In this document: positions 14,742 to 64,000 of the stretch, piece by piece
Layout: every line of letters begins with the position of its first letter
Numbering within the stretch: the first letter of the stretch is position 1
Virus record (IMG/VR): IMGVR_UViG_3300027985_000843
Location: 307,740-371,739 of that record
Length of the DNA stretch: 64,000 nt
Direction: 5' to 3' (one strand)
Program-made: the position numbers and the translations under genes
The notes under the pieces: model-generated
Seen by the model: the letters and a program-made list of their open reading frames with translations, nothing else
Databases searched by the model: none
Told to the model about the DNA's origin: nothing

Positions 14742-14748
14742 GCTCTCC

Positions 14749-14768: not shown

Positions 14769-14774
14769 CGTTCC

Positions 14775-47282: not shown

Positions 47283-47346
47283 GACACCGCCTGGCAAAAA
47301 ACACCCGGGTCTCCGAACTCCTAGCCACCGCCGTCGTAGTACCACC

Positions 47347-47622: not shown

Positions 47623-47963
47623 CCCCCGGTGTATGTTCCCACCCATGGGAACACGGCCATCCTACCGAATCTACGACTGCTGCATCTGCGGCGAAGACTC
47701 CCGAGCCTATGGAGCCCGAGAGCCCAAGCCCACCTACCCCTACTGCCACACCCACCTCATCATCGCCTTCCGACAAGAAGTCCTCGATGCCCTCACCGAA
47801 CTGGGCAAGCCCTCGACCTTCGTCGACGTGCAACACCACATCCACACCCCCTTCTCCTTCACCGTTCAAGCAGCCCTCGGCTGGCTTCACCAAAACGGCT
47901 TCGTCGACGTACAAGGCAACCTGTGGTCCGTCGTGTAGACGGTGCTGGTGTATGTTCCCTCCC

Positions 47964-48692: not shown

Positions 48693-49165
48693 TCATCGAC
48701 ATCACGTCCAACCCACCTTCCGAACTCAAAGACCCGCCCTTCACCCCAACCTACTCCCTGTGGGTCCACTCCAACCTCGGAGTGCTCGGGAGCCAAGACC
48801 AGGTCCCCTACAACAAGGAACGCATGATCTCACGGATCTCGTCACCAGGGACCTACGAGGTCATCGAATCAGACATTGTCCTCGATGTCTCCGAAAACGA
48901 CGGCAGCACCCACATCCGAGTCCTCAAGAACGGGGCTGAACTCGCCACCTTCCAAAGCGCACCTCTACCTCGCAAGCCTGAGCCCTCCAAGAACCCCCTC
49001 TCCGGCCCCGTCGAAGACCCCATCGAAGCCCAAGGCTGGTTCACCGTCTACGCCGCCGTGTACTGCCACAACTTCGTGAAGGACTACACCACCACCGCCA
49101 GGGAAGAAGCAGCCGCCGCCATCGCCGACAAGGCCCTGACCCTCTTCCGCCAACGGACCCGCTAG
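48689..49165 (+). CDS. Hypothetical protein
   Basis: Class II motif GGTG-TAGAAT. Confidence 0.7.
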   Translation: MIIDITSNPPSELKDPPFTPTYSLWVHSNLGVLGSQDQVPYNKERMISRISSPGTYEVIESDIVLDVSENDGSTHIRVLKNGAELATFQSAPLPRKPEPSKNPLSGPVEDPIEAQGWFTVYAAVYCHNFVKDYTTTAREEAAAAIADKALTLFRQRTR

Positions 49166-49478
49166 CGATGACCCCCAAAGAAGCCAAGGCCGACTTCCAA
49201 CGCCTCGTCTCTGCCCACGAAGCCGAGCTGTTCGAGTGGAAACTCAAGTACGCCGCCCTCTCCGACCACGACCGGGGCCGCCTAGCCTTCTTCCTCGACG
49301 TCCCAGGCTTCCCTCCCAAGCCCATCCACCCAAGCTACACCCACAAGGCCGGTACCCCCCACCCGCACATGGTCCACGAACAAGCCAAGCTCGGACTCGT
49401 CTGGGTCAAAGGCTACGGGTGGATGGACAAGACCTTCCGCGATGACATCATCGAGTGGCTCCTAGAAGAATCTCAGTC

Positions 49479-50432
49479 CTAGCTGCTCCACTCAAGGTCG
49501 CCTACCCGAACCAGAGCTGGTATGGACTCCAGCTCAACAGGCTCCAGCTCAACAGGCTCGACATTGTCCACGAATTCAAGAAGCGCCATAGGCACCGGCT
49601 GCAACATACCGGCATACACGACCATCGCTAGATCCGACTCCTCGATCCGAGCTACAATCACCCCCTGCCCCTGCTCCAGTAGCACGCCCGCTCGCTGATA
49701 ACCCTCTCGCAAGAAGGCCACCATCACCGGCTGATCCGGCTGAACCGTTGAGTACAACCGGCAAGCAGGAATGAACACATTGAAACCGTCCGATGTGACG
49801 ACCTGCGCCGATAACCACCCGTCACGCGTTCGAGCAGCTGACACAGGGCGAACTTGATCAACCGTTGGAAAGTTCCCTCCCGGATCCCCATCCAAGTCCA
49901 CGTTCGACCAAAAGGGCGTCGCACTCATCCAGTATGTCGGCAACGCATTCATTATCGGCCGAACATGCTCCGGTTGTACCACCACCCGCGACCCGTCCGG
50001 CAAGCCCACATACAAGCGTCGACTGAGAATGGTCACTGGAGTCCCACTCAGAACATGCCCCGGGGGAATCCCAGCATCAACATCATCCTCCCAATAAGGG
50101 ACCGGGCCACCATCCTCACGGACCATCACCGCGTCCGCCACAGATATCCTTTCCAGCTCCTCATTCACAACCACGGAACTCGCCGGGAAGGTGTCGATGA
50201 ACCGCCGGTCCGTGATGAGTATCCGCGACGTCTCGTCGATCAACATGATGAGCCGTGTCGGCCGATCACTCTCGATCGGATCAGGAATGCCCCTCTGACC
50301 TTCATGCATCACCACCATCGTCACGTCCGGCAGCGGCACTTCCACCCCCAACACGTGCGGATGGTTGATCAACGCAGACAACACCCCTGGCGACAGAACG
50401 TCCGCCACAAGCCAGACAACATGGTAAGGCAT
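49479..50432 (-). CDS. Hypothetical protein (beta-rich repeats)
   Basis: ATG 6 nt after minus-strand class II motif at 50443. Confidence 0.7.
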   Translation of the reverse strand: MPYHVVWLVADVLSPGVLSALINHPHVLGVEVPLPDVTMVVMHEGQRGIPDPIESDRPTRLIMLIDETSRILITDRRFIDTFPASSVVVNEELERISVADAVMVREDGGPVPYWEDDVDAGIPPGHVLSGTPVTILSRRLYVGLPDGSRVVVQPEHVRPIMNALPTYWMSATPFWSNVDLDGDPGGNFPTVDQVRPVSAARTRDGWLSAQVVTSDGFNVFIPACRLYSTVQPDQPVMVAFLREGYQRAGVLLEQGQGVIVARIEESDLAMVVYAGMLQPVPMALLEFVDNVEPVELEPVELESIPALVRVGDLEWSS

Positions 50433-50501
50433 CCCAAGAACATACACCGGCCAAAAGGGCCACCTCGGGGGCATAGAGCCCAACCGGTGTATGGTTGAGG
50501 C

Positions 50502-51401
50502 GTGATGGACGACGACCTCGAAGACTTCCTCTCCGACATAACCCCCAAGCCCAGACCCGAGCCCCCTCCCGTCGAGTCCACTGACGACCCCCTCGAAGAC
50601 TTCCTGCCTCCTCCCAAACCAGAAGTCCCCACCACCCTCACGCCAGAGCTGCAAGCCCAACGCGTCCTCGCTGAAGCCCCGAGCGCCAACCCCGCCTACG
50701 TCCACACCCTCGTGAGCAGATCGTCCGATGCCTTCATCGACGCGCTTCTCGACCCCACCCTGTCCAAACGAGCAAAACGAATACGCAACCTCATCCTCCA
50801 ACAAGGGGGATGGTTCGCATACAGTCAGCTGAAAGAGACCTACGCCTGCCACCGCCGAGCCAAACGAGACCTGGTCGAGAAAGGTATCACCCTCTCGGAA
50901 ACGAAAGTCCGAGGCGACACTATCTTCGAACTCGACCCGCACGCCTTCCAACGCCAACGCGAGGGCCGCCTTCCCCTCACCCCCACCGAACTCGATGAGC
51001 TGAGGGCAAGGTACAACTCCAAGTGCGTCCTGTGCCATACACCCCACCACCAACGCCACCTCGAAGCCGACCACCGCGTCCCCTTCGAAGTCGCCGGCAA
51101 CTCCCTGCACGAGCTGCATGGCATCGACGCATTCCAACCCCTGTGCGGAGCCTGCAACACGAAGAAGCAACGCGCCTGCATCGAATGCTCAAACAGACTC
51201 CCGGACGTCTGCCAAGACTGCTTCTGGGCCAACCCACAAACGTACGCCCACGTCGCCACCATCCCCGAACGACGTCTCGAAGTGGTCGTCCACAACACCA
51301 CCCTCATCAAGTTCCTAGACAGCCTTCTACCTAAGCTCCAAGTCGAAGGCCAAACACCAGGAGAAGCTCTGCTCCATCTCCTCCTCAAAGGTGCCGGGTG
51401 A
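50502..51401 (+). CDS. HNH endonuclease, SphI-like type II restriction enzyme family
   Basis: SKRA..IR..IL..G, RA.RDL...G, KC.LC...DHRVPF..AG, F.PLC...N..K..C..C.N...C..CFWA.P..Y.HV.T.PERR, matching my recollection of R.SphI. Confidence 0.7.
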   Translation: MMDDDLEDFLSDITPKPRPEPPPVESTDDPLEDFLPPPKPEVPTTLTPELQAQRVLAEAPSANPAYVHTLVSRSSDAFIDALLDPTLSKRAKRIRNLILQQGGWFAYSQLKETYACHRRAKRDLVEKGITLSETKVRGDTIFELDPHAFQRQREGRLPLTPTELDELRARYNSKCVLCHTPHHQRHLEADHRVPFEVAGNSLHELHGIDAFQPLCGACNTKKQRACIECSNRLPDVCQDCFWANPQTYAHVATIPERRLEVVVHNTTLIKFLDSLLPKLQVEGQTPGEALLHLLLKGAG

Positions 51402-52036
51402 CCCGGACTAAGGCACTTGTGTGCACACGCTTAATGAAAACCCGCACCGAGCCAAATCCCGGTGCCACGGGAGAGATCCCAACCTGCGTGCCACCGGCAC
51501 AGCACAGGGCGTCGTACGCCCAGAAGGATGAACATGTCCCACATATTGCAACTGCAAAGATCTCAAGGCCCTCTCGCGGTTCAACGTACATCCTCCAGAT
51601 TTCCGGGTGGGGCCGTAATTGCTCGCGGTCTTCTCATGGGTGAAGACCTAGCCACTCTCTGGGGTGTTCGTAACCCGGATGAATTCGACCCCTTCGCCTG
51701 GGCCAAGACAGGCACCGACCCAATTGACGAGTATCTGAGGAGACATACCTGGTCCGACGAATTCAAGACAGCCATGAAGTGGGCTGCCGAAGGGGCCCCT
51801 CCAGAGCTACATGGGCCGGGTATGGATGTTGATGGTATACGGGAAAAGTGGCCTAGAGCCCTGTTGGTTGCTGCTCACGGGTATGACCGGTTCATGCGGG
51901 CCAGGTGGACCGATCAGAACTGGGAGATCTTCGATCCAGCTCCCCTTTTGACTCCAAAGCGCTCTAGCTAGCCCCACGCCCCTTCGCGCCACCATCGACA
52001 CCGCCCACTCTCACACGAACGGTGTATGGTACCAGT

Positions 52037-53683
52037 ATGACAAAACCATGCATCCAAGAGAATGTTCTTGTCACCCCCCCATCAAGCCCAAGGGTGCGGG
52101 GAGGTCTACTCCCCCGAGTTTTCAGAACCCTTCAACAAACTCTTGGAACCATGAAAATCTCCTGGCAGATGCTCTGGCTACGGGAAGCCCCCATCCGAGA
52201 CGTCCACGTCACCTCTCGCATCTGGCTCCCCCACAAGGGCTGGTCGCTCCCAACACACCCGCCTGACCACTCCACCCTCACCCTCTGCCCCGTCCGACTC
52301 GACGACGCCAAACGGTGGATCCAATACCGGGCCGACAAGCTCGAAACCGCAAAAGGCGTCCTCTGGGCTCTCGTCCGCGACCCACGCGAAGGCGATGGCA
52401 CCCACATCAACATCGCCCTCGCCTGGCTTCCAGAAGGCTACACCATGTCCGGGGGCGAGGACGACAACCCACCCCACCCGAGGCTCGACTTCCACGAGGT
52501 CCACGATCCAAAAAGTGAGATTGAAGAGTTCCTTGCTGACTTTTCTGACCCCAATACAGCAGAGGTTCCCCTCGTTGTCCCCAGAAAATGGAAGCCAAAG
52601 AAGCCTCTGCAAGAGCATAACCCTACGGCTGCCTCTCAATGGCACCCTACAAAAAACGGAACAATCACACCTCAAGATGTAGGAGTGGGATCCAAGTACA
52701 ATGCCTGGTGGGTGTGTCCTGAAGGGCATACTCACCAGGCACCCGTTTTCCAGAAGGCCCGTGCTGGTGAGCCCGGCTCACACAGACCCTACTCCAACGG
52801 GTGCCCAACATGTCACAAGATACGACGCTCATTAGGTTGGGGGCCCGGCAAAAACTGCCTGGCAGCTAGAAAACCAGAAGTGGCCGAAGACTGGCACCCT
52901 GACAACAAGCTCCGATCGGATGAAGTGGGTTGGTCTTCTCAGGCAGTTGCCAAGTGGCGTTGTAAAACCTGCAAGCACGTGTGGGAAGCCAGCATCTTCT
53001 CAAGGTGCTGGCCCTCAAGAGCAGAGCTTAGCTGCCCCGTGTGTGTACAAAAGTTGGCGGAAAACGGAGATCCGCACGCTAAACGAAGGGCGGGGACGAC
53101 GCCCTCGCTAGCTGAGAGCCTGCCTGGGCTTGCGAAACTTTGGCATCCCACAAAGAATGGCAGCTTGACCCCTGATGATGTCACAGAGCACACCACCAAG
53201 GTAATTTGGTGGATCTGTTCCGAGGGTCATGAGTGGGAGGCTCCTGTGAAGCTCAATCGGCAGCGGTGTTTACAGTGCCGTCAAGAGAAGTCTGTAAGAA
53301 AAGCTGAAAAGGTGCGAACCGCCAACCGATTGAAGAAACAACGATGGGAACCTCTTCTGCCGTATTGGGATGATCAGAACGGCCCCGTGCCCTGGACTAC
53401 ACGCCCAAGTGTCCTAAAAAGTGTGACCTGGAGCTGTCCTGAGGGTCATGTGTGGGAAGCCACCGGGCGGCTCATGTCGAGAAAACCATTGTGCCCATAC
53501 TGTTACTTCCTCAAGCACCTGAAGAACGAATGGCAAGGCTCCGGCCTCCCCGACCTGTCCAAAAGTTACTGGTGGAGGTGCTCCTGCGGGGTCGTCTGGA
53601 AAGCTTCCTTGGCCGTCAGGGTAGGGATGAGCATGGACTACGATCATGGCCCCCCTAACTGCCCGTACTGTTCTCAGCTCTAA
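52037..53683 (+). CDS. Multi-copy treble-clef zinc-ribbon (DUF4379-like) protein
   Basis: Repeated WHP.KN...P..V...WW.C..GH.W.A...CP.C units. Confidence 0.85.
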   Translation: MTKPCIQENVLVTPPSSPRVRGGLLPRVFRTLQQTLGTMKISWQMLWLREAPIRDVHVTSRIWLPHKGWSLPTHPPDHSTLTLCPVRLDDAKRWIQYRADKLETAKGVLWALVRDPREGDGTHINIALAWLPEGYTMSGGEDDNPPHPRLDFHEVHDPKSEIEEFLADFSDPNTAEVPLVVPRKWKPKKPLQEHNPTAASQWHPTKNGTITPQDVGVGSKYNAWWVCPEGHTHQAPVFQKARAGEPGSHRPYSNGCPTCHKIRRSLGWGPGKNCLAARKPEVAEDWHPDNKLRSDEVGWSSQAVAKWRCKTCKHVWEASIFSRCWPSRAELSCPVCVQKLAENGDPHAKRRAGTTPSLAESLPGLAKLWHPTKNGSLTPDDVTEHTTKVIWWICSEGHEWEAPVKLNRQRCLQCRQEKSVRKAEKVRTANRLKKQRWEPLLPYWDDQNGPVPWTTRPSVLKSVTWSCPEGHVWEATGRLMSRKPLCPYCYFLKHLKNEWQGSGLPDLSKSYWWRCSCGVVWKASLAVRVGMSMDYDHGPPNCPYCSQL

Positions 53684-54584
53684 ATCCAGGTAGAAATTCG
53701 AGAAAGTCTTCCATCTCTCGTGCACACTCCTTGGGTGTAGCTTGTTGGTCAAGAGCTTGACTCACCGTCCAGCCCAACTTCAGACGGCTTCGGATCCTAT
53801 TTACTGGGATCTGAAGGTGCTCGGACCACTCGACCAGTGTGAGCGTCTTGCCTCCGTACGAAAGACGTGTGTTCCCCCTGTTGTTCCTTGCTTGCTGCTC
53901 CAATGTAGCCCATCGACAATTATCCGGTTCATAGTTCCCGTCATTATTGACTCGGTCTAGGCTAAGTCCCTTGTGACAGGGACCCATGTCTTTCAAGAAG
54001 GCTAAAAAACTCTCCACCCATCGGTCACAGACAGTGATTCCCCTGCCCCCGTAATCGTCCCACGCCGGATGTCTTGGATTGGTGCATCGTGAAATCATGG
54101 CTTGCCACGCTAAATACGTAGGCGTCCCAGACATGCCGTGCTGTTCCCTCAGCTTCTCAGACTTTTGCCGACCCCTCTGTTGCCCTTTTGGCCTAATTCT
54201 CGGGTCGAGTACCTCTTCGATAGCCCACCCTGCCTTCAGTCGGTTGTATATGTTGTGCCTCTTCATTCCCAACCGTTCCGCCCACTCAGGTACCGACAAC
54301 GTCACCCCACCCAACGTCAACCGGACCGTCTTCCGCGTGTTTCTCGCCTGTTGCTCCCTCGTAGCCCACCGACAATTGCCCGGCTCGTAGTTCCCGTCCG
54401 GGTCAATCCGGTCAAGTGACCACCCTTTTCCTGGACGCCGCCCCATATCTTCCAGGAAGTTGTCGAAAACCTCCCATCGCTCACACACCCGGATCCCACG
54501 CCCACCGTAGTCCGGATGGTCGTTCCGGCATCGGGTGAGCATCGAATGCCACACGTGATATTCAGGCAGGTTTGATGACGCCAT
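53655..54584 (-). CDS. Tandem double HNH homing-endonuclease-like protein
   Basis: Two copies of W..M..RC...YGGRGI.VC.RW...SLDR...DGNYEP.NCRWAT..QQARN plus HTH; class II promoter. Confidence 0.88.
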   Translation of the reverse strand: MASSNLPEYHVWHSMLTRCRNDHPDYGGRGIRVCERWEVFDNFLEDMGRRPGKGWSLDRIDPDGNYEPGNCRWATREQQARNTRKTVRLTLGGVTLSVPEWAERLGMKRHNIYNRLKAGWAIEEVLDPRIRPKGQQRGRQKSEKLREQHGMSGTPTYLAWQAMISRCTNPRHPAWDDYGGRGITVCDRWVESFLAFLKDMGPCHKGLSLDRVNNDGNYEPDNCRWATLEQQARNNRGNTRLSYGGKTLTLVEWSEHLQIPVNRIRSRLKLGWTVSQALDQQATPKECAREMEDFLEFLPGFRAENSTGS

Positions 54585-54681
54585 GCCTAGAACATACACC
54601 GGACGACCCTGTGGACGAACAAGCAGGGGCCGCCAAGGCGGCCCCTGCTTGTTCCCTGCCCCCTCCTGCCCATCTGACCGC

Positions 54682-54732
54682 CCGAAGAGAGGCAGCATCG
54701 CCCTGCCGAAGAGAGGCAGCATCGCCCTGCCG
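54682..54732 (+). repeat. 24-bp tandem repeat x2 (ccgaagagaggcagcatcgccctg)
   Basis: Direct duplication; ggcag/ctgcc stem. Confidence 0.85.
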
Positions 54733-55269
54733 TGGCCCGAAGGGCCGAGGGCGTGGCAAAAACACGGGCGGGAGAGGGTTTGGGATTATCGGGGCGTTTT
54801 TCGGCCAAAAAATGACCGGGGCGGGATTTTGGATTTTTGACTTTTCGAACCACAGAGCGCAATACGTACCCTAAACACGCCCCGTAGCCCTCTTTGTCAA
54901 TCTCAAAGTCATAATACGTCGGTTCTGCTACGGCGGTAATTCAGCCCCCTCCGGAGGTCCGCCCCGGCCAGTGACCTGGCCTCGAACCCAACACCCCGAC
55001 CCCCGTCCATCTCGTACGCCCTCACGGTAAGCGCGTAGCTCACGCCCACGAGCCCACCACCCCAGGGCAACGCCCGCGAGGGCGGCCGCCAAAGGTGTGA
55101 GAAGGGGGACGATTTGTCCGAACATGCGAGCCACCGCGAGCGTAGTAAGGGTGTGGCGGGTGGGAGCCCCCTCCCACAGGGAGGCCGGGAGGATCGAGCC
55201 TCCCACCCGCACACCTACACCTCGACACAAGGAGATTGTTCGAGCGTATGCCCAGGGCCTGAGCCATGC

Positions 55270-55452
55270 CCCTGGGCAGGGGGCGTAGCCCGAGGCCCTG
55301 GGCAGGGGGCGTAGCCCGAGGCCCTGGGCAGGGGGCGTAGCCCGAGGCCCTGGGCAGGGGGCGTAGCCCGAGGCCCTGGGCAGGGGGCGTAGCCCAGGGG
55401 GCGTAGCCCGAGGCCCTGGGCAGGGGGCGTAGCCCGAGGCCCTGGGCAGGGG
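55270..55452 (+). repeat. 26-bp tandem repeat (ccctgggcagggggcgtagcccgagg), about 7 copies
   Basis: Unit starts at 55270, 55296, 55322, 55348, 55374, 55414, 55440; one 14-bp partial duplication; inverted copies near 55485 and 55517. Confidence 0.95.
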
Positions 55453-55745
55453 CACCGCCTCGGGCATGGCAGGGGGGCGTATGCCCCCCTGCCCAGGGGC
55501 GTGGACAAAGAAAGGCCCCTGCCCATGTCCCTGGGCAGGGGCCTAGAATCCCTCGGCAACCACCAGCCCTGCTATGCACCAAGCCAGAGCTGGCGGAGGT
55601 ACGGGCAGCACCCTCATCTCGACTGCCGGCCCCATTGCCGGCGTAGTGCCGAAGCGTGGTACTTTTCGCACCTTGCGGACTGGGCCTCTTTCACACAGCC
55701 CAGCAGGCCCCGCCGTGCCAGAATTCTATTCGTCCCGGAGAACGT

Positions 55746-56063
55746 TCACGACCCTAGGGCCTCAAGGGCTTCGGGGGTCGGCACGTAGCCGCGTAGCTCC
55801 CGACTGCCCTCATAATAGACCCTGTCCACGAGGCCCTGCTTCGCGAGCTTCGACAGGTACCCGCCCGCGAGCAAGTTCCGCTTCGGGTTGTTCGCGGGGA
55901 TGGGGCGGGATGTCTCCTCCGGCCACATGACCCGGCCGAATACCGCCGCCTTCACGGGGCGTCCCTGGCCGATCCGGACCAGGATCTTGATCGCCTTGAG
56001 GGCTGTGGGCGTCATGCTTCCTCCGTGTCTCGCGAACTTCCCGATGGTGGTGTTGGTATTCAT
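55746..56063 (-). CDS. Hypothetical protein (possible winged helix)
   Basis: Class I promoter; GGYLSKLAKQGLVDR. Confidence 0.7.
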   Translation of the reverse strand: MNTNTTIGKFARHGGSMTPTALKAIKILVRIGQGRPVKAAVFGRVMWPEETSRPIPANNPKRNLLAGGYLSKLAKQGLVDRVYYEGSRELRGYVPTPEALEALGS

Positions 56064-56098
56064 GACCGTACTACGCTCCCCGAACATCCAAGTTCGGA

Positions 56099-56335
56099 TT
56101 AAACTTCGTCTCGAAGGATGTTCACGAGAAGCGTGGGGTCATCGGCCGCGCCATCGAAGTTGCAGAGGCAGGCCGTCCACCGAAGGGGTGGCTCGCCAGG
56201 AAACGGTGAGGGGGACTCGACGTCGACCACCCACCCTCCAGGGATATAGCGGGGCTCATCCGTGGTCGTGACGACCCCGGAATGGTTCACCTTGTACTTG
56301 AGGCCCTTCTTGACCTCGCCGTGGCTCATGCTCAT
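56099..56335 (-). CDS. Hypothetical protein
   Basis: Class I promoter. Confidence 0.7.
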   Translation of the reverse strand: MSMSHGEVKKGLKYKVNHSGVVTTTDEPRYIPGGWVVDVESPSPFPGEPPLRWTACLCNFDGAADDPTLLVNILRDEV

Positions 56336-57241
56336 GCACGTACTACGCTCGCCACCGGGAGGAGTTCGGAACCCTCTTCCATTTTGGCGGCTTCCACCAC
56401 ACGGTCCCAGAAGAGCATGTTGATCACGTCAACCACGAGGCGGATGATCGCGCCGTTCCAACGAATCGAACACTTCACGATGTCTGCGTCCAAGAAGGGT
56501 TGCAGCCGCTCGGCGATCCATTGGTCGATCGCTATCAGGACCTCGTTCAGCGGCTCGGGGAAGTCCACGATCAGACTGTTCGAACGCACCTCGACGAAGC
56601 GACCCATCTAGCTGTCCTCCTCGACACACGATCCCCCGACGTGCGTCGCGTAGACATTGGCTGCTCGGATGATCGCATTGATCTTGGTGGTCCCCTGCCG
56701 GAACCATTTGCGGCGTGTCTTGCGGTCGGACAGAGACACGAAGCTCGTTCGACTCACGTCCCCCACAGACATTCGCCGCTGCCGCATGAGCCGTCGCGTC
56801 GATGCTCGATACATCTCCGCGCAGCTGTCGCACAACGGCCAGATTAATCCTCCCCCGCTCACAAAGAACACAGCGGCTTGCCCCCCGCATCGTGCTCGAT
56901 GAGCGTTCCCCCTGAACACACAATCGATCATGTCCGGATCGTATACCGGCCCGGTCGGGGATCAAGCACAAATCCTACTGGATTGCGTTTTCGTGCAGGG
57001 CGAAATGACTTAAATATGCAGGCATTCTCCCTCCTCGCGTGTCCCGACGAATTATCCGAACTTCCGGGCGCGGGAGATCGTAGTAAGGGTGTGGCGGGTG
57101 GGGACCGGCCCCGATCCGGGCCTCATGGAAGATCGAAGCCCCCGGAACCGTCCCGATCCGAGGGCCTACCTCCGTAGTGAGGCCCTGTGAGGGTACGCCC
57201 CGGGCCCGGGGCGTGTCAACTATACCGAATGTTCTCGATGA

Positions 57242-58258
57242 TCATGGCTCCTCCGGGTACTTCGCTCGTACCTTCTCCAGCAGCTTCTGAAGCGCCTCCG
57301 TCACCTTCACCTCAGGGATGCTCGTCGCCCTCACACCGGTCAGGATGATGATCCAGTCGGCCGGGAGGGGGTCCGGCTCGGGCTCCGAAGGGTTCAGCTC
57401 TTCTCGGATGGCCTGCTCGACGGCCTCATCGTGGGCCATGTACCGCTCGAAGTCCTCGTCCGATTCCCGGGCCGGTGCCGGCCCCTTCTCGGCCAGGTCC
57501 GCGAGGGCGTTGGCCGCCAACTTGGTCGCCTTCGGGATCTCATACTCGTTGACCGGACTCACCCCAAGACCCGCCCGGATGTCCGCGAGGGGGTCGCCAC
57601 TCGTCTCCTCGTAGGCCGACAAGCCATCCAAGTCCTCCCGGAAGATGTCGTCCGAGCCCGAGAGGGTGTCGTCCTCCTCTTCTTCCTCGTCTTCGTCCTC
57701 GTCGGGGTCCTTGTGCTCCATCCACCGCTCGAAGTCCTCATCCGACTCCCGCTTGGGGGGCGGGACGGGGTCCGGACCCATCACAACCATCGGCTGGTGG
57801 ACCGGAATCGACAGGTCGGGGGTGGCGTCGTGTCGTTTCAGCCCCTCTGAGGGCCCGTTTTCGGGGGTTTCGGGGGTCGAAACGACATCGGGACTGCCGC
57901 CAGGCACCTCTTCCCCAGCCGTGTCGATGACTTGGGGGTCGGGGGTCAAAACGGACATTTTGTCCGTTTTGGGGCGAGGGGGACTGAGAAGTTTTTTGGC
58001 CTCCGCCAGGTTGGAGGCATCAGCCAGTCGAGGATTGTCCTTCTGGGAGTATACCCACATGTATCTTCGGGCACTTCGTGGTTCGATACCAAGCTTCTCA
58101 AGCCAGGGACCAAACTCCCCGTGCTTGAGGGCCTTCTTCTGCTCAGTGAGAAGCTCCCCGATACGGATGAAGTCCGGAAGGGACTTCCGGAAGACTTGGC
58201 CCACCTTCTCGATGAGCTGTAGAACCTCTTCAGAATGGTCTACGACTAGGTCAGTCAT
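57242..58258 (-). CDS. DUF3102 domain protein with long acidic low-complexity tail
   Basis: IRIGELLTEQKKALKHGEFGPWLE...RSARRYM; RESDEDFER motif twice. Confidence 0.8.
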   Translation of the reverse strand: MTDLVVDHSEEVLQLIEKVGQVFRKSLPDFIRIGELLTEQKKALKHGEFGPWLEKLGIEPRSARRYMWVYSQKDNPRLADASNLAEAKKLLSPPRPKTDKMSVLTPDPQVIDTAGEEVPGGSPDVVSTPETPENGPSEGLKRHDATPDLSIPVHQPMVVMGPDPVPPPKRESDEDFERWMEHKDPDEDEDEEEEEDDTLSGSDDIFREDLDGLSAYEETSGDPLADIRAGLGVSPVNEYEIPKATKLAANALADLAEKGPAPARESDEDFERYMAHDEAVEQAIREELNPSEPEPDPLPADWIIILTGVRATSIPEVKVTEALQKLLEKVRAKYPEEP

Positions 58259-58677
58259 ACTGCCTCCATGATCTCGGCCACTTCGTGATCCCAACGAGTG
58301 TCTTCCAGGGCCTCCCCATCCTTGAAGACGATGAGGGCAACCCCGGCATCCTTGAGAGCGTCGCGGTAGGTGGGGTTCGCCTCCCAGTCCAACACAACAC
58401 AAGGCTTCCGTTTCAAGGCGGTTGCGTAGAGAACCGCTTGGCCTACGGCTGAGAACGAGCTACGACACCCAGTTTTCAGCTCATACACCCACGTCTTGTC
58501 CACTACATCAGCTCGTCCAACCGAGCATCTGACCTGCTCCTGGCATGGGCCCAACCACGCCACGAAAGCCTTCTGCATGACTCGTTCTCGGGACTTGTAG
58601 GTGGGTCGTAAGAAGACTCGGGCGAGCCGCATCTCCGTGAGAAGCCGTCTTATCTCTTGGGCTGGTTCGTCAGTCAT
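58255..58677 (-). CDS. PD-(D/E)XK nuclease with QxxxY motif
   Basis: RE...GRADVV...YELK...VGQAVLY; class II promoter. Confidence 0.75.
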   Translation of the reverse strand: MTDEPAQEIRRLLTEMRLARVFLRPTYKSRERVMQKAFVAWLGPCQEQVRCSVGRADVVDKTWVYELKTGCRSSFSAVGQAVLYATALKRKPCVVLDWEANPTYRDALKDAGVALIVFKDGEALEDTRWDHEVAEIMEAV

Positions 58678-59640
58678 GCCCCCGAACATACACCGGGCCG
58701 AACGCCGAAGGCCGGCGTCTTTTCACCGGCCTTCGGACTCGCTCAAACCGAACTGGGCTCTTCGGCCCATGGGGTGAGCGTACCTACAAGAACCCGCTCG
58801 TGTAGCCGTAGGGTGGACTGCTCACAAGGTCTGCTGTTGAGCGATTGAGCCCATTGGCGGGCTCCGTTACCGGCCGGAGGGACGTCACCTCCGGTTGAGC
58901 CAGGGCAACGAACCACTCCCAGGCAATGAGAACGGGCAAGTAGTTCGTTGCAACCCAGAACACGGTACTAGGATACACCAACCAGACTCAGATGGGGGCG
59001 AAAACTCAGATCTTCCCCTCGTCGACGAGTGTCAAGAGGGTCTCAGCTACCCGCCACATGGGCAGCGTGGTCGTACCCGTCGGGGCCAGCTGGTCTCCCT
59101 CCCCCTCCTCCCGGAGATAGTTGTTGTACTTGCCCAAGAACTCGGCCACCTCTTCGTCCGTGAGGTCGTCGATGAACCCTAGGTCTGTTGCTCCCTCGCT
59201 CGACAAGTCCTTTTCCTTGGGCGCCGCGTGCTTCAAGAGCATGTTGCAGCCCTCCGCGTTCAACATGTCGCAAGCCACGACCAACACACGGCACAGCAGC
59301 TTCCTCTCAGCGCTCGTCATGGGAACTTCTCCCTCTTGGTCACCACGAAGCCGTGACCGGCGTCATAGTGGGCCTTCACCCGCTTGACCGGCTTGTGAAG
59401 GATGTGCCTCTCCGACCGAATGATGTCGGTCAGCTCCCTCTCCAGGCCGGCGTCTACGGGCCGCACAAGCTCCCGGAGGGACTGAATCGACAGGGTGTAG
59501 GTATCGAGCACCGGCCAGCCCAGGGCGGCGGCCACCCGCTCTCGTAGCTCCTCAGGCACGATTCCTCCAATCCAGCCACACGCGAACGGCGACGGCCGCA
59601 AAGAACCCTACGGTGAAGCTGATGACGATGCCGGGGTACA

Positions 59641-59799
59641 TGTCAGCCCTCCTCGAACATTTCGAACTGCTCGTCCCAGTCGCTATACCCCATCTCCATG
59701 GGAAACTCTTCCGGGTTGATGGGGTGGCTCTCTCGCCACCACTTCTCAAATCGTGCCAGATCCTCACGCTTCTTGTTGAGGAATTCATCCAAAGGCATG
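59641..59799 (-). CDS. Small acidic hypothetical protein (52 aa)
   Basis: AAGGAGG SD; MPLDEFLNKKREDLARFEKWW... Confidence 0.65.
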
Positions 59800-60079
59800 T
59801 TCCAGCCCTCCTTTAACGGCCTAAGGCGGGCACCCCCCAGGGTCCCGCCTCCCGTCCCCAGTTCCCTTGCCGTACCAACCTACCGGGGCGAGGTTGGGGT
59901 CACCGGCTGACACTATCTCAAGGCTGAAATCCTCCTTCCGTGTCGGTTGGCCGTCCTGTGACGGGTTCCTGTCAGCCCCCTGTCCCTTGTCTTACTTCGG
60001 CCGTGCGGGGGTCACGGCCAGGGTTTTACGCTCTCAAGGGCAGCCTCCTCTCAGGTTTGGTTCCTATGCCAAGCCCCCT

Positions 60080-60334
60080 TCACTTGCAGGGGTCGGGGTT
60101 GCCGTACTCCGCCGCGACGGTGCGGGGACTGTCGAGCCCCGCAGCTTCCAGGACGTCACACGCTGCCGACAGCGTCTCTTTGCAGCCCGAAAGCTGCGCC
60201 TTCAAGAAGGCAACCTGGGTCTCCAGGTCTTGGATGCGAAGAGCCTGGTCCAGCTCCTTGCGGGTCGGGCGGTCGACCGAGGGGCTTCGAAGCTGCGGCA
60301 TGGCGGGGTCTCTGTCTGCGGTGTTGGTGTTCAT
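60080..60334 (-). CDS. Hypothetical protein
   Basis: Class I promoter. Confidence 0.75.
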   Translation of the reverse strand: MNTNTADRDPAMPQLRSPSVDRPTRKELDQALRIQDLETQVAFLKAQLSGCKETLSAACDVLEAAGLDSPRTVAAEYGNPDPCK

Positions 60335-60378
60335 GTCTCTACTACGCTCCCCGAAGGCCAAGGTTCGGAAAAATCGTC

Positions 60379-60618
60379 TCACTCGTCTTCGCACTCAGCT
60401 CGTTCCGTGAGGATGTCGTCCACCAGGGACTCGAAGGCTTCCTTGCTGTCGACGTCTTCGACGTACTCATCGTTGTCGTCCCAGCATTCCAGCCGGGTGC
60501 CACCTTCGTAGTCCTCGTGCTCTTCCGAGTAGGTGACCTTCAGAAGGGCGAAGCCTTCGTAGCGGGCGACGGTCACGTGGGCGATGTAGGCGGGGTGCTC
60601 GGTGATGTTGGTGTTCAT
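60379..60618 (-). CDS. Acidic hypothetical protein
   Basis: Class I promoter. Confidence 0.75.
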   Translation of the reverse strand: MNTNITEHPAYIAHVTVARYEGFALLKVTYSEEHEDYEGGTRLECWDDNDEYVEDVDSKEAFESLVDDILTERAECEDE

Positions 60619-60940
60619 GTCTCTATTACGCTCCCCGAAGGCCAAGGTTCGGTGAAAAGTTCACTTCTCGCAGCGGTGTCGGTCGAACCGCTTGCTGTCG
60701 ACGCTGACTTCGCATCCACAGCCGGGGCAAACCAAGAAGAGGCTGCCCTCTCGCACCACCGCAGTGGTCCCCAGCTGCTCACTGCCCACCTTCATGTTGC
60801 GAGCCGTCTTCGAGCCCGGGACCATACTGTAGACGTCAGCAGCTCGAATGCTCTCGCGGGAGCGAATCTGCATTGCCCACCCCCGGATTCTCGCCACGAC
60901 CTCTTTCCAGGTCTTGGCTGACATGTCTTGGGCACCCATG

Positions 60941-61129
60941 TCAGTTGACATCCCCAGCACCAACGCGGTTGGCGGCCCACTCGAAGTTGCCGCAGCGGAC
61001 CGCACGGTTGTTGGCGTGACGCTCGCGGCGGCGAGCAGTGACCTTGATGCCCCGGAGGGTGGCCTCACCGTCAACGGTGCGGCGGGTGGCCTTACGAGCT
61101 GCGCGGGTGGTGGTCATCTTGGCGTTCAT
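60941..61129 (-). CDS. Basic hypothetical protein
   Basis: Class I promoter. Confidence 0.7.
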   Translation of the reverse strand: MNAKMTTTRAARKATRRTVDGEATLRGIKVTARRRERHANNRAVRCGNFEWAANRVGAGDVN

Positions 61130-61171
61130 GGTCTTACTACGCTCCCCGGAGGTGATGGTTCGGAAGAAAGA

Positions 61172-61450
61172 TCAGACCGTGAGGACTTGCTTCGCGTAGC
61201 TCTTCGCGGCCTTGAGGGTCGCCCTCGCGTCCCCACCCTTGGGCACGCTGAACTCTCGGTCCTTGTCATCGATGCCGAAGAAGCGAACCTCGTAGCTGCC
61301 TGCGCGGTACTCGTGAATCGAGCCACCAACGTCGACCACGTGCTTGATCAGCTCCCCAACCGACTCCCCATCGACCAGGACTTCGCACGACTGGTCGTCA
61401 TGCCAGAGACCCGAGATCGATTCCATCTTGCTGAAGGTGACCTTGCTCAT
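61172..61450 (-). CDS. Hypothetical protein
   Basis: Class I promoter. Confidence 0.75.
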   Translation of the reverse strand: MSKVTFSKMESISGLWHDDQSCEVLVDGESVGELIKHVVDVGGSIHEYRAGSYEVRFFGIDDKDREFSVPKGGDARATLKAAKSYAKQVLTV

Positions 61451-61495
61451 GCCCGTACTACGATCAGGGCGAGGGAAGGTTCGGAAGAAAATGGT

Positions 61496-61804
61496 TCACC
61501 AAACTCGGTCGGGCTCGTAGTCGTACCCACGAGGGGCCGGCTCGGCCTCAGGCTCCTCTTCCGGCCCTCGGTCACACAGGATGATGGCTTCCGCCATCTC
61601 ATAGCCGACGTCATCGGCCAGCTCGTCCAGGGCCTCGTCACGGTCCTCGATCTTCTGGACGGCCTGGGCCGCCGCGTGGACCCGGCGAGCCTCTCTGAGG
61701 GCCCTCTGCGCCCCGCGAACGGCCTCTTCGGCCATCTCCAGGGCGATCTCCGCGTCTTCGATTGCGGTGTAGGTGTCGTAGGTCCAGGGTTTTGAAGTTG
61801 CCAT
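61496..61804 (-). CDS. Acidic coiled-coil hypothetical protein
   Basis: Class I promoter. Confidence 0.75.
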   Translation of the reverse strand: MATSKPWTYDTYTAIEDAEIALEMAEEAVRGAQRALREARRVHAAAQAVQKIEDRDEALDELADDVGYEMAEAIILCDRGPEEEPEAEPAPRGYDYEPDRVW

Positions 61805-61844
61805 GTCCCTACTACGCTCCCCAGCCTCAAAGGTTCGGAACAAA

Positions 61845-62018
61845 TCAGCCCTCGACCTCAAGACGGTCAAGGATCGCAAGCATGGCCTTCAGATTCGTCC
61901 GCATGGTCCCGTGAACATCCCGGGAAGGTGGCTCCCCGATCACGGCCTGCACATCCGCTTGCAGCCCCTCAAGGCACCGCACGAGGATGGCCTCTTCCTT
62001 CGCTGTTGGTTCTCGCAT
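61845..62018 (-). CDS. Hypothetical protein (57 aa)
   Basis: AGGAGG SD immediately after the CCA of the tRNA-like RNA; MREPTAKEEAILVRCLEGL... Confidence 0.7.
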   Translation of the reverse strand: MREPTAKEEAILVRCLEGLQADVQAVIGEPPSRDVHGTMRTNLKAMLAILDRLEVEG

Positions 62019-62028
62019 CTCGCCTCCT

Positions 62029-62159
62029 TGGTGGAGCTGACCGGAATCGAACCGGCTTCCCCGTTCACGGTCTGCCTAAAGGCCCTTCTCGGGCCATCCA
62101 GGTCCCCCCGGCCCTGGCCTAGCTTTCGCTCGAACGGGAGGTGCCATACCTCCAGCCCC
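62029..62159 (-). ncRNA. 131-nt tmRNA-like/tRNA-Ala-like RNA
   Basis: 5' GGGGCUG pairs with CAGCUCC-A-CCA 3' (G3.U70, A73); T arm GCCGG-UUCGAUU-CCGGU; helix CCCGUUC/GAACGGG; 3-nt linker GAA. Confidence 0.8.
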
Positions 62160-62162
62160 GAA

Positions 62163-62429
62163 TCACACCCTGCTGAAGTCCACCACCTGGGTCATGGCCT
62201 TGATCGTCTGCGCATAGGTCGTCGAAGCAATCCAGATGGCAAGGTCGTAGCTCCCAGGGGTTCTGTCCTTCGGAAACGTCTCCTGGAAGCACTGCCACAG
62301 GCCCATCCCCCACTCGGGGTCAGGATCCTCACCCCGATGCACGGCAAGCTGAACCTGCTCGCGGGCCGCGTCGATAGCCCAGGTGATGATTGCTTCGTTG
62401 CTCTTGCCGATTTCGTTCAAGGTTGCCAT
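62163..62429 (-). CDS. Hypothetical protein
   Basis: Class I promoter; stop 3 nt before the tRNA-like RNA. Confidence 0.75.
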   Translation of the reverse strand: MATLNEIGKSNEAIITWAIDAAREQVQLAVHRGEDPDPEWGMGLWQCFQETFPKDRTPGSYDLAIWIASTTYAQTIKAMTQVVDFSRV

Positions 62430-62451
62430 GCCCGTACTACGATCCCCGGCC

Positions 62452-62829
62452 TCAAGAGTTCGGAGAATTCTTTCCCCTGGCCTTCCGCTGCCGCTCCGCC
62501 TCCCGCTCCAGGGCGGGGTACTTCCCTGGAGGAAGCCCGCACAGGCCGGCAAGCTCCGGCCCCATGTCCCGAGCCAGTTGCCGCCGCTCCCGCCTCACGG
62601 CCTCTTGCTCCCGCCGCTCTGCCTCCTCCCTACGGGCCCTCAAGATGTCCCGTAGCCTCCCTATGTCTGTCCTCACCTTGAACAGGATGAGACCCTCACC
62701 ACGGCCCTCCAGGAAGGCTTCCCCGGCCAGGGACTCAGCCACCATCGCTTCCAAGGTCGCGTCGTCGATGAGCCTCACGTCCCCTCGATCAAACGCATCC
62801 CATGCTGCTCGCATTGTCGAACGTTCCAT
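62452..62829 (-). CDS. Hypothetical protein
   Basis: GGAGG SD; track ORF. Confidence 0.65.
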   Translation of the reverse strand: MERSTMRAAWDAFDRGDVRLIDDATLEAMVAESLAGEAFLEGRGEGLILFKVRTDIGRLRDILRARREEAERREQEAVRRERRQLARDMGPELAGLCGLPPGKYPALEREAERQRKARGKNSPNS

Positions 62830-62996
62830 GTCACGCCTCCTCCCGAAGCATCTCCTCCAGGATCGAATCCGCCAGCTCTATCTGAGCCTTGTAATCCTCG
62901 ACAGTCAGCCCAAGGCGGTCTGCCTCCTCCTGCCACCACTCCTCAGGCGAGGACGAGGACAGGGGAACCAACGTCCGCGAACGGCCAATGTACGGC

Positions 62997-63209
62997 CTAC
63001 CAGCCGGTGTCGTTCTCACAGCTCCGCCTCCTATTGTCCGGGCCCTTCTCGGCCAGCGTGGTGCCATCCTCGCCTCTCCAGATGACTCTGCCAACGGTCA
63101 GCGTCAATCGCTGCCCACTCGCCTTGGTCACCGTGACTGTCTGGCCCTCGACCAGGTCCGTTCCACGAAGGCCCCAGTTCCCGTTCTTCAACTTGGCGAA
63201 GGTTGTCAT
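62997..63209 (-). CDS. Hypothetical protein
   Basis: Class I promoter. Confidence 0.7.
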   Translation of the reverse strand: MTTFAKLKNGNWGLRGTDLVEGQTVTVTKASGQRLTLTVGRVIWRGEDGTTLAEKGPDNRRRSCENDTGW

Positions 63210-63883
63210 GCTCGTACTACGACCCCCGCCCCCCAAGGTTCGGAACAAAAGCGAAACGGCCCGAGGGCTGGTCCTCCCTCAGGCCGTCTCAGAACAGAGC
63301 CACGCAGGGACCAGCTGCGCGGTATCCAGACGGCTACCTCGGCCAGTCTATCGGCCCGGGACTCTAACCCAAGAGGCTAGCTCGTCAGCGTCAGACCTAC
63401 GTCAGGTCTGGGAGGGCTCGCACCTCCCCGGCCACCATTGGCCGTCTCTGCTCTCCCCCCTACTACGTCCGCCAAGCCCAGATGTTCGGATCAAAGATCC
63501 CAGGCCAGGCCCCGGGCCGAAGAGCCCCTGGCCCCGCCGGGGACTCCCACCCGCCACACCCGTACTACGACCCCGCCTCACCAGAAGTTCGGAAAAATCT
63601 CACGCACCCCACCACAAAAATTCCACGGGGCTCGCACACCCACCCACGCCCCCGTACATGGCCCGGGCCGGTGGATTCCAGTGAGGGCGGAGCGAGGGGG
63701 CCCGATTTGGCAATCGTGCTGCGCCTTTGAGCGTAAGTGTACGGAAATATTGAGGAATTCCCGGGCAATGGCTGGGGGGCGTGAAAACGTTTGCAATCCG
63801 GCCCCCCTTCCCGGCCCTTGCCCTTGAATTTGCCTGGCCTTGAACACGGCCTGTCGGCCACGTTCGAGGCCGAGCAGCCATCA

Positions 63884-63907
63884 AACTACTCAATTAATTG
63901 AGTAGTT
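63884..63907. repeat. Perfect 24-bp AT-rich palindrome AACTACTCAATTAATTGAGTAGTT
   Basis: Equals its reverse complement; lies in a non-coding region. Confidence 0.9.
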
Positions 63908-64000
63908 CTGGCCGTTTTTACCTACATTCCCCCACCTTTGATTCCGATAAGTGGGAGGGGTGTGTGTGGTGTATGGTTGGGGGTATGTCGACGGTGAGGG

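What the first reader, a model, noticed from the sequence alone, without database searches (positions are those of the whole stretch)
55118..63592. Three class I promoters launch the same non-ATG 5' end GTGGCGGGTGGG; two bracket 8.5 kb as inverted repeats
Seen: CGTAGTA-(A/C)GGGT-GTGGCGGGTGGG at 55141 (+), 57079 (+) and 63563 (-). The GTG frames are junk-like. At 55153 the 5' end pairs with ctcccacccgcacac about 50 nt later, closing a hairpin. A fourth gene-less promoter lies at 63461 (-). Inference: a family of non-coding RNAs with a shared 5' leader, possibly replication primers or regulators. The roughly 30-bp inverted copies could also define an invertible segment.
Basis: partly seen in the sequence, partly recalled or inferred. 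Interest (0 to 1): 0.6.

Follow-up and report, generated by a model that had tools for sequence, protein, structure and literature searches.

The report
Promoter-locked G-run non-coding units, jumbo phage
Three promoters of a roughly 370-kb hydrothermal-vent phage launch short non-coding transcripts that share only a G-rich start; a related phage keeps the same design six times, so it is under selection, but what it does is still unknown.

Summary
CGTAGTA-(A/C)GGGT-GTGGCGGGTGGG occurs exactly three times (55141+, 57079+, 63569-), against none in shuffles.

The window is the last 64 kb of a 371,739-bp virus record. The promoter, TCCGAAC-N16/17-CGTAGTA, is the phage's own two-block promoter of ECF-sigma type. 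It occurs 52 times in the record, and in 40 cases an ATG lies exactly 5 nt downstream, giving leaderless mRNAs.

The three GTG units are a separate subclass. All have a 17-nt spacer and a fixed G-run module (GGG-N-GNGG-Y-GGG-N-GGG, about -4 to +14). Their bodies are unrelated and hairpin-rich, and two of the three have a predicted terminator-like 3' end.

A related phage of 240,951 bp carries six such units, also all with N17, but with AGA, TGT or TGA where the GTG sits. Codon scores of the GTG frames fall below every real leaderless gene, so the frames are not coding.

The 31-nt inverted copies are simply shared promoter modules. No inversion joint and no nearby recombinase were found.

Only unit a closes a 5' hairpin. 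That hairpin is conserved next to a 26-bp tandem array in both phages.

The function is inferred. I favour a cis-acting, promoter-proximal signal on the non-template DNA or nascent RNA. A shared 5' tag on trans-acting small RNAs is the main rival.

The parts
55117..55147 (+). Promoter of unit a: TCCGAAC, 17-nt spacer, CGTAGTA
55148..55166 (+). G-run module of unit a (about -5 to +14; inferred start at 55153)
55153..55214 (+). 5' hairpin of transcript a. The G-run pairs with its complement at 55200-55214. An equivalent hairpin with different sequence sits beside the array in the relative.
55270..55452 (.). Tandem array of 26-bp units (about 7 copies, 100% identical) with core GGGCAGGG, lying downstream of unit a. 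The relative has 12 units of the same length and core.
55474..55553 (.). Inverted GGGCAGGG/CCCTGCCC sites forming strong palindromic hairpins. On the - strand they look like a terminator for the converging genes.
55746..56931 (-). Four small genes converging on the array. Leaderless promoters lie at 56069-56098 and 56341-56370.
57055..57085 (+). Promoter of unit b (17-nt spacer)
57091..57217 (+). Transcript b, about 125 nt. It has a G-run 5' end and three hairpins, the last a perfect GC palindrome (57192-57217) abutting the stop of the converging gene 57242-58402.
57242..63209 (-). Early cluster of small, mostly leaderless genes, bracketed by inward-facing units b and c. Promoters lie at 60340, 61135, 61456, 61810, 62435 and 63215. 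The cluster is syntenic with 7.6-13.1 kb of the relative, which is bracketed the same way by units f and g.
63563..63593 (-). Promoter of unit c (17-nt spacer)
63495..63557 (-). Transcript c, about 60 nt. It has a G-run 5' end and a GC hairpin followed by AUCUUUG, directly before the next promoter.
63461..63490 (-). Fourth gene-less promoter (16-nt spacer, no G-run module)
63245..63455 (-). Transcript x, about 210 nt. It is a multi-branch fold closed by its 5' and 3' ends (-115 kcal/mol, z = -5.4), followed by an intrinsic terminator at 63291-63252. It has no Rfam match and no counterpart in the relative.

Best explanation
SHOWN. The three sites are members of a conserved class of short, non-coding early transcription units of a jumbo phage. 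Each unit is a 17-nt-spacer version of the phage's own two-block promoter (TCCGAAC-N17-CGTAGTA). It is fused at a fixed distance to a G-run module, GGG-N-GNGG-Y-GGG-N(1-2)-GGG, spanning about -4 to +14. After that come unrelated, hairpin-rich sequences: predicted lengths are about 60 nt (c) and 125 nt (b), and for a the 3' end is undetermined.

The same promoter with a 16-nt spacer drives about 40 leaderless mRNAs whose ATG sits where the GTG sits here. The GTG is therefore an accident of the G-run, not a start codon.

INFERRED. The promoter has the ECF-sigma shape (AAC and CGT blocks). It is probably read by the phage's own sigma-like protein, whose gene carries such a promoter in both phages.

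INFERRED, the mechanism I commit to. The conserved part is locked to the promoter's geometry, while the RNA bodies are free to vary. The module therefore most likely acts in cis during the first about 15 nt of transcription. The G-runs on the non-template strand, together with the very stable rG:dC hybrid, would form a signal on the early elongation complex. That signal could be a pause, a loading site or an R-loop seed. It marks these transcripts, or the DNA beside them, for a common partner.

Unit a is a special case. Its G-run closes a conserved hairpin in front of a 26-bp repeat array.
For: The module is exact three times and position-locked.

Nine units in two phages were aligned. All G positions, CCGAAC and CGTAGTA are invariant, while the loop positions vary.

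All 9 units have a 17-nt spacer. ATG promoters split 38 N16 to 3 N17 in this phage and 6 to 5 in the relative.

In the relative, 6 of the 8 genome-wide copies of the motif sit directly behind the promoter.

The bodies share no similarity and no second motif. Pairing of the 5' end is no better than in shuffles, except in unit a.

The frames are non-coding: codon scores fall below every real gene, and the start codon is not conserved.

Placement is conserved. Units b and f, and units c and g, sit at the two ends of the syntenic minus-strand cluster.

A hairpin closed by the G-run lies beside the array in both phages, with different sequences.

Sigma70 region 2 proteins lie behind their own promoter in both phages.

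A possible partner exists. A conserved protein of about 600 aa combines a NusG-like part with a 5'-3' exonuclease.
Against: There are no RNA data, so the start sites, 3' ends and even expression itself are inferred.

Within this phage the loop bases are also identical in all three copies. That fits a sequence-specific reader, which could equally be a trans partner of the RNA.

Two of this phage's three units and some of the relative's have a predicted terminator-like 3' end, as free-standing small RNA genes do.

Beyond +15 the transcripts are not G-rich, so a long R-loop is not favoured.

The loci are not the strongest G-quadruplex candidates in the genome.

The NusG-like fusion also occurs in distant relatives whose promoters differ. 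In the one relative examined (G003), no G-run class was seen among its GTGTAATA promoters.

Only two genomes carry the class.
Confidence: 0.45

Rival explanations
1. These are trans-acting small RNAs that share a 5' tag or seed. Each unit makes a stable small RNA. The common G-rich 5' end is bound by one partner: a protein such as a nuclease, chaperone or host factor, or a C-rich RNA target. The different bodies give each RNA its own role.
For: The units are discrete, each with its own promoter, and some have terminator-like 3' hairpins. The 5' sequence is identical in all three copies, loop bases included. The units lie in an early region rich in other non-coding RNAs: transcript x and a mini tmRNA-like RNA.
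Against: No family of complementary sites exists in either phage; the only long complement lies inside transcript a itself. The strict 17-nt spacer is not explained. The bodies are not conserved even between syntenic units. The host is unknown, so host targets could not be searched.
Confidence: 0.28
2. The module is only an optimised start region or a repressor operator. The G-run would be the preferred initial transcribed sequence of this polymerase, or a DNA operator at +3 to +14. The biological function would then lie elsewhere: in the variable RNA bodies, or in mere promoter occupancy.
For: The module is tied to promoter geometry and sits in a fixed register. The array core GGGCAGGG resembles the module, and unit d of the relative contains it exactly. 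This fits one DNA-binding protein reading both.
Against: Transcript x is also non-coding and uses the same promoter type without the module. Sixteen conserved positions is long for a start-region effect. An operator with no gene to regulate is odd.
Confidence: 0.15
3. These are leaderless micro-ORFs starting at GTG and encoding peptides that begin Met-Ala-Gly-Gly.
For: The GTG sits exactly where the ATG of the leaderless genes sits. The relative has two likely real leaderless GTG genes, at 9094 and 13962. In the relative's unit i the frame stays open for 83 codons.
Against: Codon scores are below all 38 real genes. The lengths are 53, 28 and 51 codons, with no similarity after the motif. Four of the relative's six units have no start codon at that place. 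The differences between the similar stretches of b and e fall on first and second codon positions (read).
Confidence: 0.05
4. An invertible DNA segment is bounded by the inverted copies at 55.15 and 63.57 kb.
For: There is a 31-nt inverted repeat at 94% and a 54-nt one at 80%.
Against: The repeats are the promoter module itself, present nine times in both orientations in two phages. A contig of an independent assembly is colinear over 55423-64000 with no joints. The relative keeps the same orientation. The ORFs scanned in 52-63 kb (all of 140 aa or more and most smaller ones) show no recombinase domain, and the only recombinase-like gene found lies at 36124-37545. Inversion would exchange like for like.
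Confidence: 0.02

Closest known systems
ECF-type sigma factor promoters (for example Bacillus subtilis sigma-W, TGAAAC-N16-CGTATA; from my own knowledge)
   Same: Two blocks with AAC in the -35 and CGT(A) in the -10, and a rigid 16-17 nt spacer. The sigma-like gene sits behind its own promoter.
   Different: The promoter is phage-borne and used about 50 times. It is placed so that +1 is the A of ATG, giving leaderless mRNAs. Pfam recognises only region 2 of the sigma. No experiment links this sigma to the promoter.
ops / RfaH and plasmid PrfaH: a 12-nt non-template-strand signal in the leader that loads a NusG paralogue (PMC5995543, PMC11880322)
   Same: A short, asymmetric, G-rich element just downstream of a promoter and read in one orientation. 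Eight of 12 positions of GGCGGGTGGGAG match ops, GGCGGTAGCGTG; the full ops consensus is from my own knowledge, since only GGCGGTAG was seen in the paper. Both phages encode a NusG-like NGN+KOW module.
   Different: Here the element starts at about +3 and no long operon follows. The NusG-like module is fused to a 5'-3' exonuclease and also occurs in relatives without the motif. Binding has not been tested.
Mitochondrial CSB II, phage T4 oriF/oriG and ColE1 RNA II: transcripts that stay on the template and prime replication (PMC3488243, PMC4176368; T4 and ColE1 from my own knowledge)
   Same: A promoter followed by G-runs on the non-template strand. The products are short and non-coding. There are several copies. 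One copy lies beside a repeat array.
   Different: The G-runs are at the very 5' end and only about 15 nt long. The sequence downstream is not G-rich. No origin has been mapped, and the neighbouring gene is an HNH endonuclease, not an initiator.
Small-RNA families with a shared 5' end (OmrA/OmrB, Qrr1-4; from my own knowledge)
   Same: Several copies, each with its own promoter, with identical 5' ends.
   Different: Those families also share their bodies and have known complementary targets. Here the bodies are unrelated and no target set was found.
Lambda PR' 6S transcript with Q antitermination (from my own knowledge)
   Same: A gene-less short transcript that ends at a terminator, with a conserved initial transcribed signal.
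   Different: Lambda has one copy in front of the late operon. Here there are several copies, two of which face against the neighbouring genes.

Membership tests
Leaderless protein-coding gene | Start codon at +1 that is kept in relatives | tested here: not met
   GTG is present in all 3 copies here, but the relative has AGA (three times), TGT (twice) and TGA at that place.
Leaderless protein-coding gene | Codon usage like that of the phage's real genes | tested here: not met
   Scores are -0.18 to -0.31 per codon. The 38 real genes average +0.28, with a minimum of -0.11.
Any Rfam RNA family | Covariance-model match at or near the gathering score | tested here: not met
   No match at gathering score in the window. 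At E up to 5, nothing lies on units a or c or on transcript x; the only hit overlapping a unit is a chance-level Actino-pnp match (E 2.7, 19.7 bits against a 47.7-bit threshold) on the opposite strand within transcript b.
ECF-sigma-type promoter | -35 block containing AAC, -10 block containing CGT, spacer of 16-17 nt | tested here: met
   26 exact copies in the window against 0 expected. Spacers are 16 or 17 nt only.
ECF-sigma-type promoter | A cognate sigma of the sigma-70 family that recognises it | tested here: inconclusive
   Both phages have a protein with sigma-70 region 2 (29 and 26 bits, above the cut-off) behind such a promoter. Recognition cannot be tested with these tools.
Small-RNA family with a shared seed | Stable, discrete transcripts | not testable with these tools
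   Only DNA runs hold this sequence. Terminator-like 3' ends are predicted for b, c and x.
Small-RNA family with a shared seed | A set of complementary target sites | tested here: not met
   In the phage, long complements lie only opposite the units themselves and inside transcript a. The host is unknown.
R-loop or hybrid G-quadruplex priming element (CSB II type) | Clustered G-runs on the non-template strand downstream of a promoter | tested here: met
   Four runs lie between -4 and +14 in all nine units.
R-loop or hybrid G-quadruplex priming element (CSB II type) | A persistent RNA:DNA hybrid, and DNA synthesis starting there | not testable with these tools
   There are no read-level data. 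The G excess stops after +15. G4Hunter scores are not among the top 25 of the genome. GC skew gives no inflection.
ops-like loading site for a NusG paralogue | A conserved, oriented element of about 12 nt in the leader | tested here: met
   Shown in alignment A2.
ops-like loading site for a NusG paralogue | A specialised NusG paralogue that co-occurs with the element | tested here: inconclusive
   A fusion of NGN, KOW and a 5'-3' exonuclease is present in both phages. It is also present in three distant relatives; the one examined in detail (G003) uses other promoters.
Invertible DNA segment (Hin/Gin or fim type) | Both orientations present in the population | tested here: not met
   Contigs are colinear with no joints. 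Contigs can miss rare variants.
Invertible DNA segment (Hin/Gin or fim type) | A site-specific recombinase within or beside the segment | tested here: not met
   No recombinase domain among the ORFs scanned in 52-63 kb; a few small ORFs in 58.7-62.9 kb were not scanned. The nearest recombinase-like gene found is 18 kb away.

The most novel reading that the evidence does not exclude
The G-run module couples phage transcription to DNA metabolism. Transcription from these promoters would leave the G-rich 5' RNA on its C-rich template, as an R-loop or hybrid G-quadruplex. The clade's conserved protein, a NusG-like part fused to a 5'-3' exonuclease, would ride on the polymerase and process that hybrid. 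This would create primers or entry points at several defined places, one of them beside the 26-bp repeat array. It would be a bacterial-virus counterpart of mitochondrial CSB II priming, with a dedicated nuclease tethered to the polymerase.
Probability: 0.15. Interest if true: 0.8.

Novelty: new variant of a known kind. Interest (0 to 1): 0.55.

Why it matters
Huge phages from metagenomes are annotated almost only by their proteins. Here the raw sequence gives a complete promoter grammar. About 50 promoters place +1 on the ATG. A second, non-coding promoter class differs by one base of spacer and carries a 16-nt G-run module conserved between phages that share no other nucleotide similarity in these units.

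This gives a direct handle for experiments on how an uncultured jumbo phage runs its early programme. It also links to a conserved and, as far as my one full-text search showed, undescribed protein that fuses a NusG-like part to a flap nuclease. If the module turns out to be a priming or loading signal, it would be a new way of coupling transcription to replication in viruses of bacteria. If the units are ordinary small RNAs, the result is a new phage small-RNA family of modest interest.

Tried and rejected
- **Known RNA families:** Rfam at gathering score and at E up to 5, and ARAGORN, give nothing on the units beyond one chance-level antisense hit.
- **Close relatives in phage collections:** megablast against GenBank phages gives no match.
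- **Exact module in IMG/VR:** none apart from this record.
- **Promoter-plus-G-run pattern in metagenome contigs:** of the loci returned, nearly all were chance hits inside high-GC genes. Only the relative's own contig and one doubtful 3.2-kb contig (L095) looked right. L095 has no convincing homology and no T-rich upstream element, so I did not use it.
- **Species genomes:** 3 single chance hits, so no prophage relatives and no host clue.
- **Relatives found through the sigma protein and the small gene next to unit c:** only the same relative at close range. Three distant huge phages (sigma 26-28% identical) showed at most a weak excess of a short CGAAC-N16/17-CGTA pattern. The one examined in detail uses GGTGTAATA-type promoters without a G-run class.
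- **Shared structure:** pairing of the 5' motif is no better than in shuffles in 8 of 9 units. No second shared motif was found.
- **Target search:** no set of complementary sites.
- **G-quadruplex uniqueness:** the loci are not among the top 25 G4Hunter windows.
- **AT-rich DNA upstream, as an unwinding element:** present for all three units here but not in the relative.
- **Replication initiator beside the array:** the neighbouring gene is an HNH endonuclease.
- **GC skew:** no origin-like turn.
- **RNA evidence:** no RNA run holds the sequence.
- I left out that step, a tblastn of the unit i frame, and scanned the frame by reference instead, with no family found.
- **Literature search by sequence words:** no relevant paper.


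Full report
**What the window is.** The window is the last 64 kb (307740-371739) of a single-contig virus record of 371,739 bp. The record has 59.4% G+C, is classed by IMG/VR as linear and is estimated at 78% complete. It carries tail proteins, a DNA polymerase, a UvrD-like helicase, a topoisomerase, tRNAs and a tmRNA, so it is a jumbo phage. The DNA is held by runs of a hydrothermal-vent metagenome; no RNA run holds it.

**The observation.** The 24-nt string CGTAGTA-(A/C)-GGGT-GTGGCGGGTGGG occurs at 55141-55164 (+), 57079-57102 (+) and 63546-63569 (-). It does not occur in any of 100 shuffles (sequence read). The inverted copies measure 31 nt at 94% (55141-55171 against 63539-63569) and 54 nt at 80%. 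The 5' end at 55153 pairs with 55200-55214 to close a 62-nt hairpin; the 88-nt fold has an energy of -43.2 kcal/mol and z = -3.1. A further gene-less promoter lies at 63461-63490 (-).

**The promoter.** TCCGAAC-N16/17-CGTAGTA has 26 exact copies in the window against 0 expected. The record has 52 copies, concentrated in its first 20 kb and last 90 kb. In 40 of the 52, ATG begins exactly 5 nt after CGTAGTA, and the frames that follow are real genes. The promoter therefore places +1 on the A of the start codon and makes leaderless mRNAs.

An AAC block, a rigid spacer and a CGT block is the shape of promoters read by ECF-type sigma factors (established knowledge). Both this phage and its relative encode a protein with sigma-70 region 2, and that gene lies behind the same promoter. 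That this protein reads the promoter is an inference.

**The three sites form a distinct subclass, and it is conserved.** A pattern scan of IMG/VR found a relative of 240,951 bp and 51.7% G+C with the same promoters. It has six gene-less promoters followed by the same kind of G-run, at 328+, 2806-, 3057+, 13881-, 15227- and 15759-.

In the alignment of all nine units, the invariant columns are CCGAAC, CGTAGTA and the G positions of GG-N-G-N-GG-Y-GGG-N(1-2)-GG(G). The loop positions vary. All nine have a 17-nt spacer. ATG promoters split 38 to 3 in favour of 16 nt in this phage, and 6 to 5 in the relative. In the relative, 6 of the 8 copies of the motif in 241 kb lie directly behind a promoter.

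**Not coding.** Where this phage has GTG, the relative has AGA, TGT or TGA. The three GTG frames have 53, 28 and 51 codons. They score -0.18, -0.31 and -0.21 per codon, below the first 30 codons of each of 38 real leaderless genes (mean +0.28, minimum -0.11). The one stretch that can be aligned between unit b and the relative's unit e differs at first and second codon positions (read). One unit of the relative (i) is followed in frame by an 83-codon ORF that may be real, so the module can perhaps also head an mRNA.

**What is shared, and what is not.** Beyond about +16, the transcripts share no similarity within or between the phages (blastn and nhmmer) and no second motif. The excess of G stops at +15. 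The 5' motif pairs no more than in shuffled controls in eight of the nine units. The family is therefore defined by the promoter plus the module, not by an RNA fold.

Predicted 3' ends are a GC palindrome at 57192-57217 for b and a hairpin followed by AUCUUUG at about 63495 for c. For a the 3' end is open: it may run into the repeat array.

**Placement.** The minus-strand cluster of small genes at 57.2-63.2 kb is syntenic with 7.6-13.1 kb of the relative. In both phages one unit faces inward at the cluster's 3' end (b here, f in the relative) and one at its 5' end (c here, g in the relative).

It is not evidence for inversion, for four reasons:
- The repeats are promoter modules found in both orientations nine times.
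- A contig of an independent assembly covers 55423-64000 colinearly without a joint.
- The relative keeps the same orientation.
- The ORFs scanned in 52-63 kb (all of 140 aa or more and most smaller ones) show no recombinase domain, and the only recombinase-like gene found is at 36124-37545.

**Unit a and the array.** A tandem array of 26-bp units (about 7 copies, identical) with core GGGCAGGG begins 55 nt after the hairpin of transcript a. The relative has an array of the same unit length and core, and its contig breaks inside it. A sister assembly runs through it: 12 units at L164 8021-8330.

To the left of that array, and pointing into it, a G-run closes a 100-nt hairpin with its own complement (z = -4.1). 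This matches unit a here, but with a different sequence, so the structure has been kept. The promoter in front of it is degenerate in the relative.

In both phages, genes on the far side converge on the array. The neighbouring gene here is an HNH endonuclease, not an initiator. I could not decide whether the array is a set of DNA-binding sites or a transcribed repeat RNA.

**The fourth promoter.** It has a 16-nt spacer and no G-run. Its predicted transcript (63455 to 63245) is a multi-branch fold closed by its two ends (-115 kcal/mol, z = -5.4), followed by a clear terminator. It matches nothing in Rfam and has no counterpart in the relative. It is a good candidate for a separate, novel structured RNA.

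**Mechanism.** What is shown is a non-coding, conserved, promoter-locked module. What it does is inferred.

I favour a cis-acting role in the first about 15 nt of transcription (0.45), for four reasons:
- The module co-varies with the promoter's spacer.
- It keeps its register to within 1 nt.
- The RNA bodies are free to change.
- The motif persists beside the array in the relative even where the promoter has decayed.

Known systems that work this way are the ops site, which loads RfaH through the non-template strand (PMC5995543; an ops-like site just downstream of a promoter in IncX plasmids, PMC11880322), and G-run elements that hold the RNA on the template (PMC3488243, PMC4176368).

Both phages, and three distant relatives, encode a protein of about 600 aa with an N-terminal NusG-like part and a C-terminal 5'-3' exonuclease. 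The N-terminal part gives PDB NusG hits at E about 1e-4 and matches the PHROG 'transcription antiterminator' family at E 1e-7. The exonuclease domain scores E 7e-32. The protein is 69% identical between the two phages. It is a plausible reader or processor of such a signal. However, its presence in relatives that use other promoters means the link is only a lead.

The main rival (0.28) is a set of trans-acting small RNAs with a common 5' tag. In its favour are the terminators and the fully identical module within this phage. Against it are the lack of any target set and the unexplained spacer rule. The other rivals are a mere start-region or operator effect (0.15), micro-ORFs (0.05) and inversion (0.02).

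**Limits.** The class is known from two genomes. No transcript data exist. The host is unknown, since scans of species genomes gave only chance hits.

Noticed in passing
window 62029-62159 (-): A 131-nt mini tmRNA-like RNA. It has only the tRNA-like domain: an acceptor stem with a G-U pair, a T arm and a 3' CCACCA. It scores 29 bits (E 6e-10), below Rfam's gathering score. It starts 4 nt after the stop of gene 62163-62429 and lies just before a gene with a Shine-Dalgarno site. ARAGORN does not call it.
   Followed up: partly
G000:C1:247554-247919 (-), locus L155: A full-length tmRNA (114.5 bits), with several tRNA-sized hits nearby at 255-276 kb. The phage therefore carries its own tmRNA in addition to the mini version.
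   Followed up: no
G000:C1:219027-220877 (-), locus L166 1-1845; relative L165 1426-3222: A protein of about 600 aa that fuses a NusG-like NGN+KOW part to a 5'-3' exonuclease (flap nuclease). It is 69% identical between the two phages and is present full-length in three distant huge phages. One full-text search for such a fusion returned nothing.
   Followed up: partly
window 55270-55452; relative L164 8021-8330: A tandem array of 26-bp units with core GGGCAGGG (7 copies here, 12 in the relative). The unit length and core are conserved, but the rest of the unit is not. The IMG/VR contig of the relative and a Logan contig of this phage both break inside it.
   Followed up: partly
window 63884-63907: A perfect 24-bp palindrome inside the most AT-rich 50-mer of the whole window (34% G+C), about 300 nt upstream of unit c and about 90 nt from the contig end. 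Both assemblies stop at the same base, 64000.
   Followed up: no
window 53655-54722 (-) and 52022-53683 (+): Two HNH endonuclease-like genes directly upstream of unit a. One has a duplicated module (PHROG E 1e-103). The other has five treble-clef zinc fingers (DUF4379).
   Followed up: no
locus L011 790-1701 (-) (G000:C1:282948-283859); relative L022 6647-7582: A sigma-like protein (only sigma-70 region 2 is recognised) behind a copy of the phage promoter with a leader of about 35 nt. The arrangement suggests it drives its own synthesis.
   Followed up: partly
window 44176-44829 and about 13900-15175: Two further repeat families. One has units of 56-72 nt sharing a core of about 35 nt. The other is a 34-38-nt element repeated about every 70 nt, with one more copy at 6.0 kb of the record.
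   Followed up: no
window 46000-52000: Unusually strong strand bias (GC skew down to -0.26, AT skew up to +0.21) compared with the rest of the window.
   Followed up: no
G000:C1:43611 (-) (outside the window): Another gene-less copy of the promoter. It is followed by GTA and a direct repeat of a 15-nt GC-rich word, and may be one more non-coding unit.
   Followed up: no
locus L164 13488-14333 (-): A TnpB-like gene (OrfB_IS605 and Cas12f-like domains) in the relative, a few kb beyond its array.
   Followed up: no
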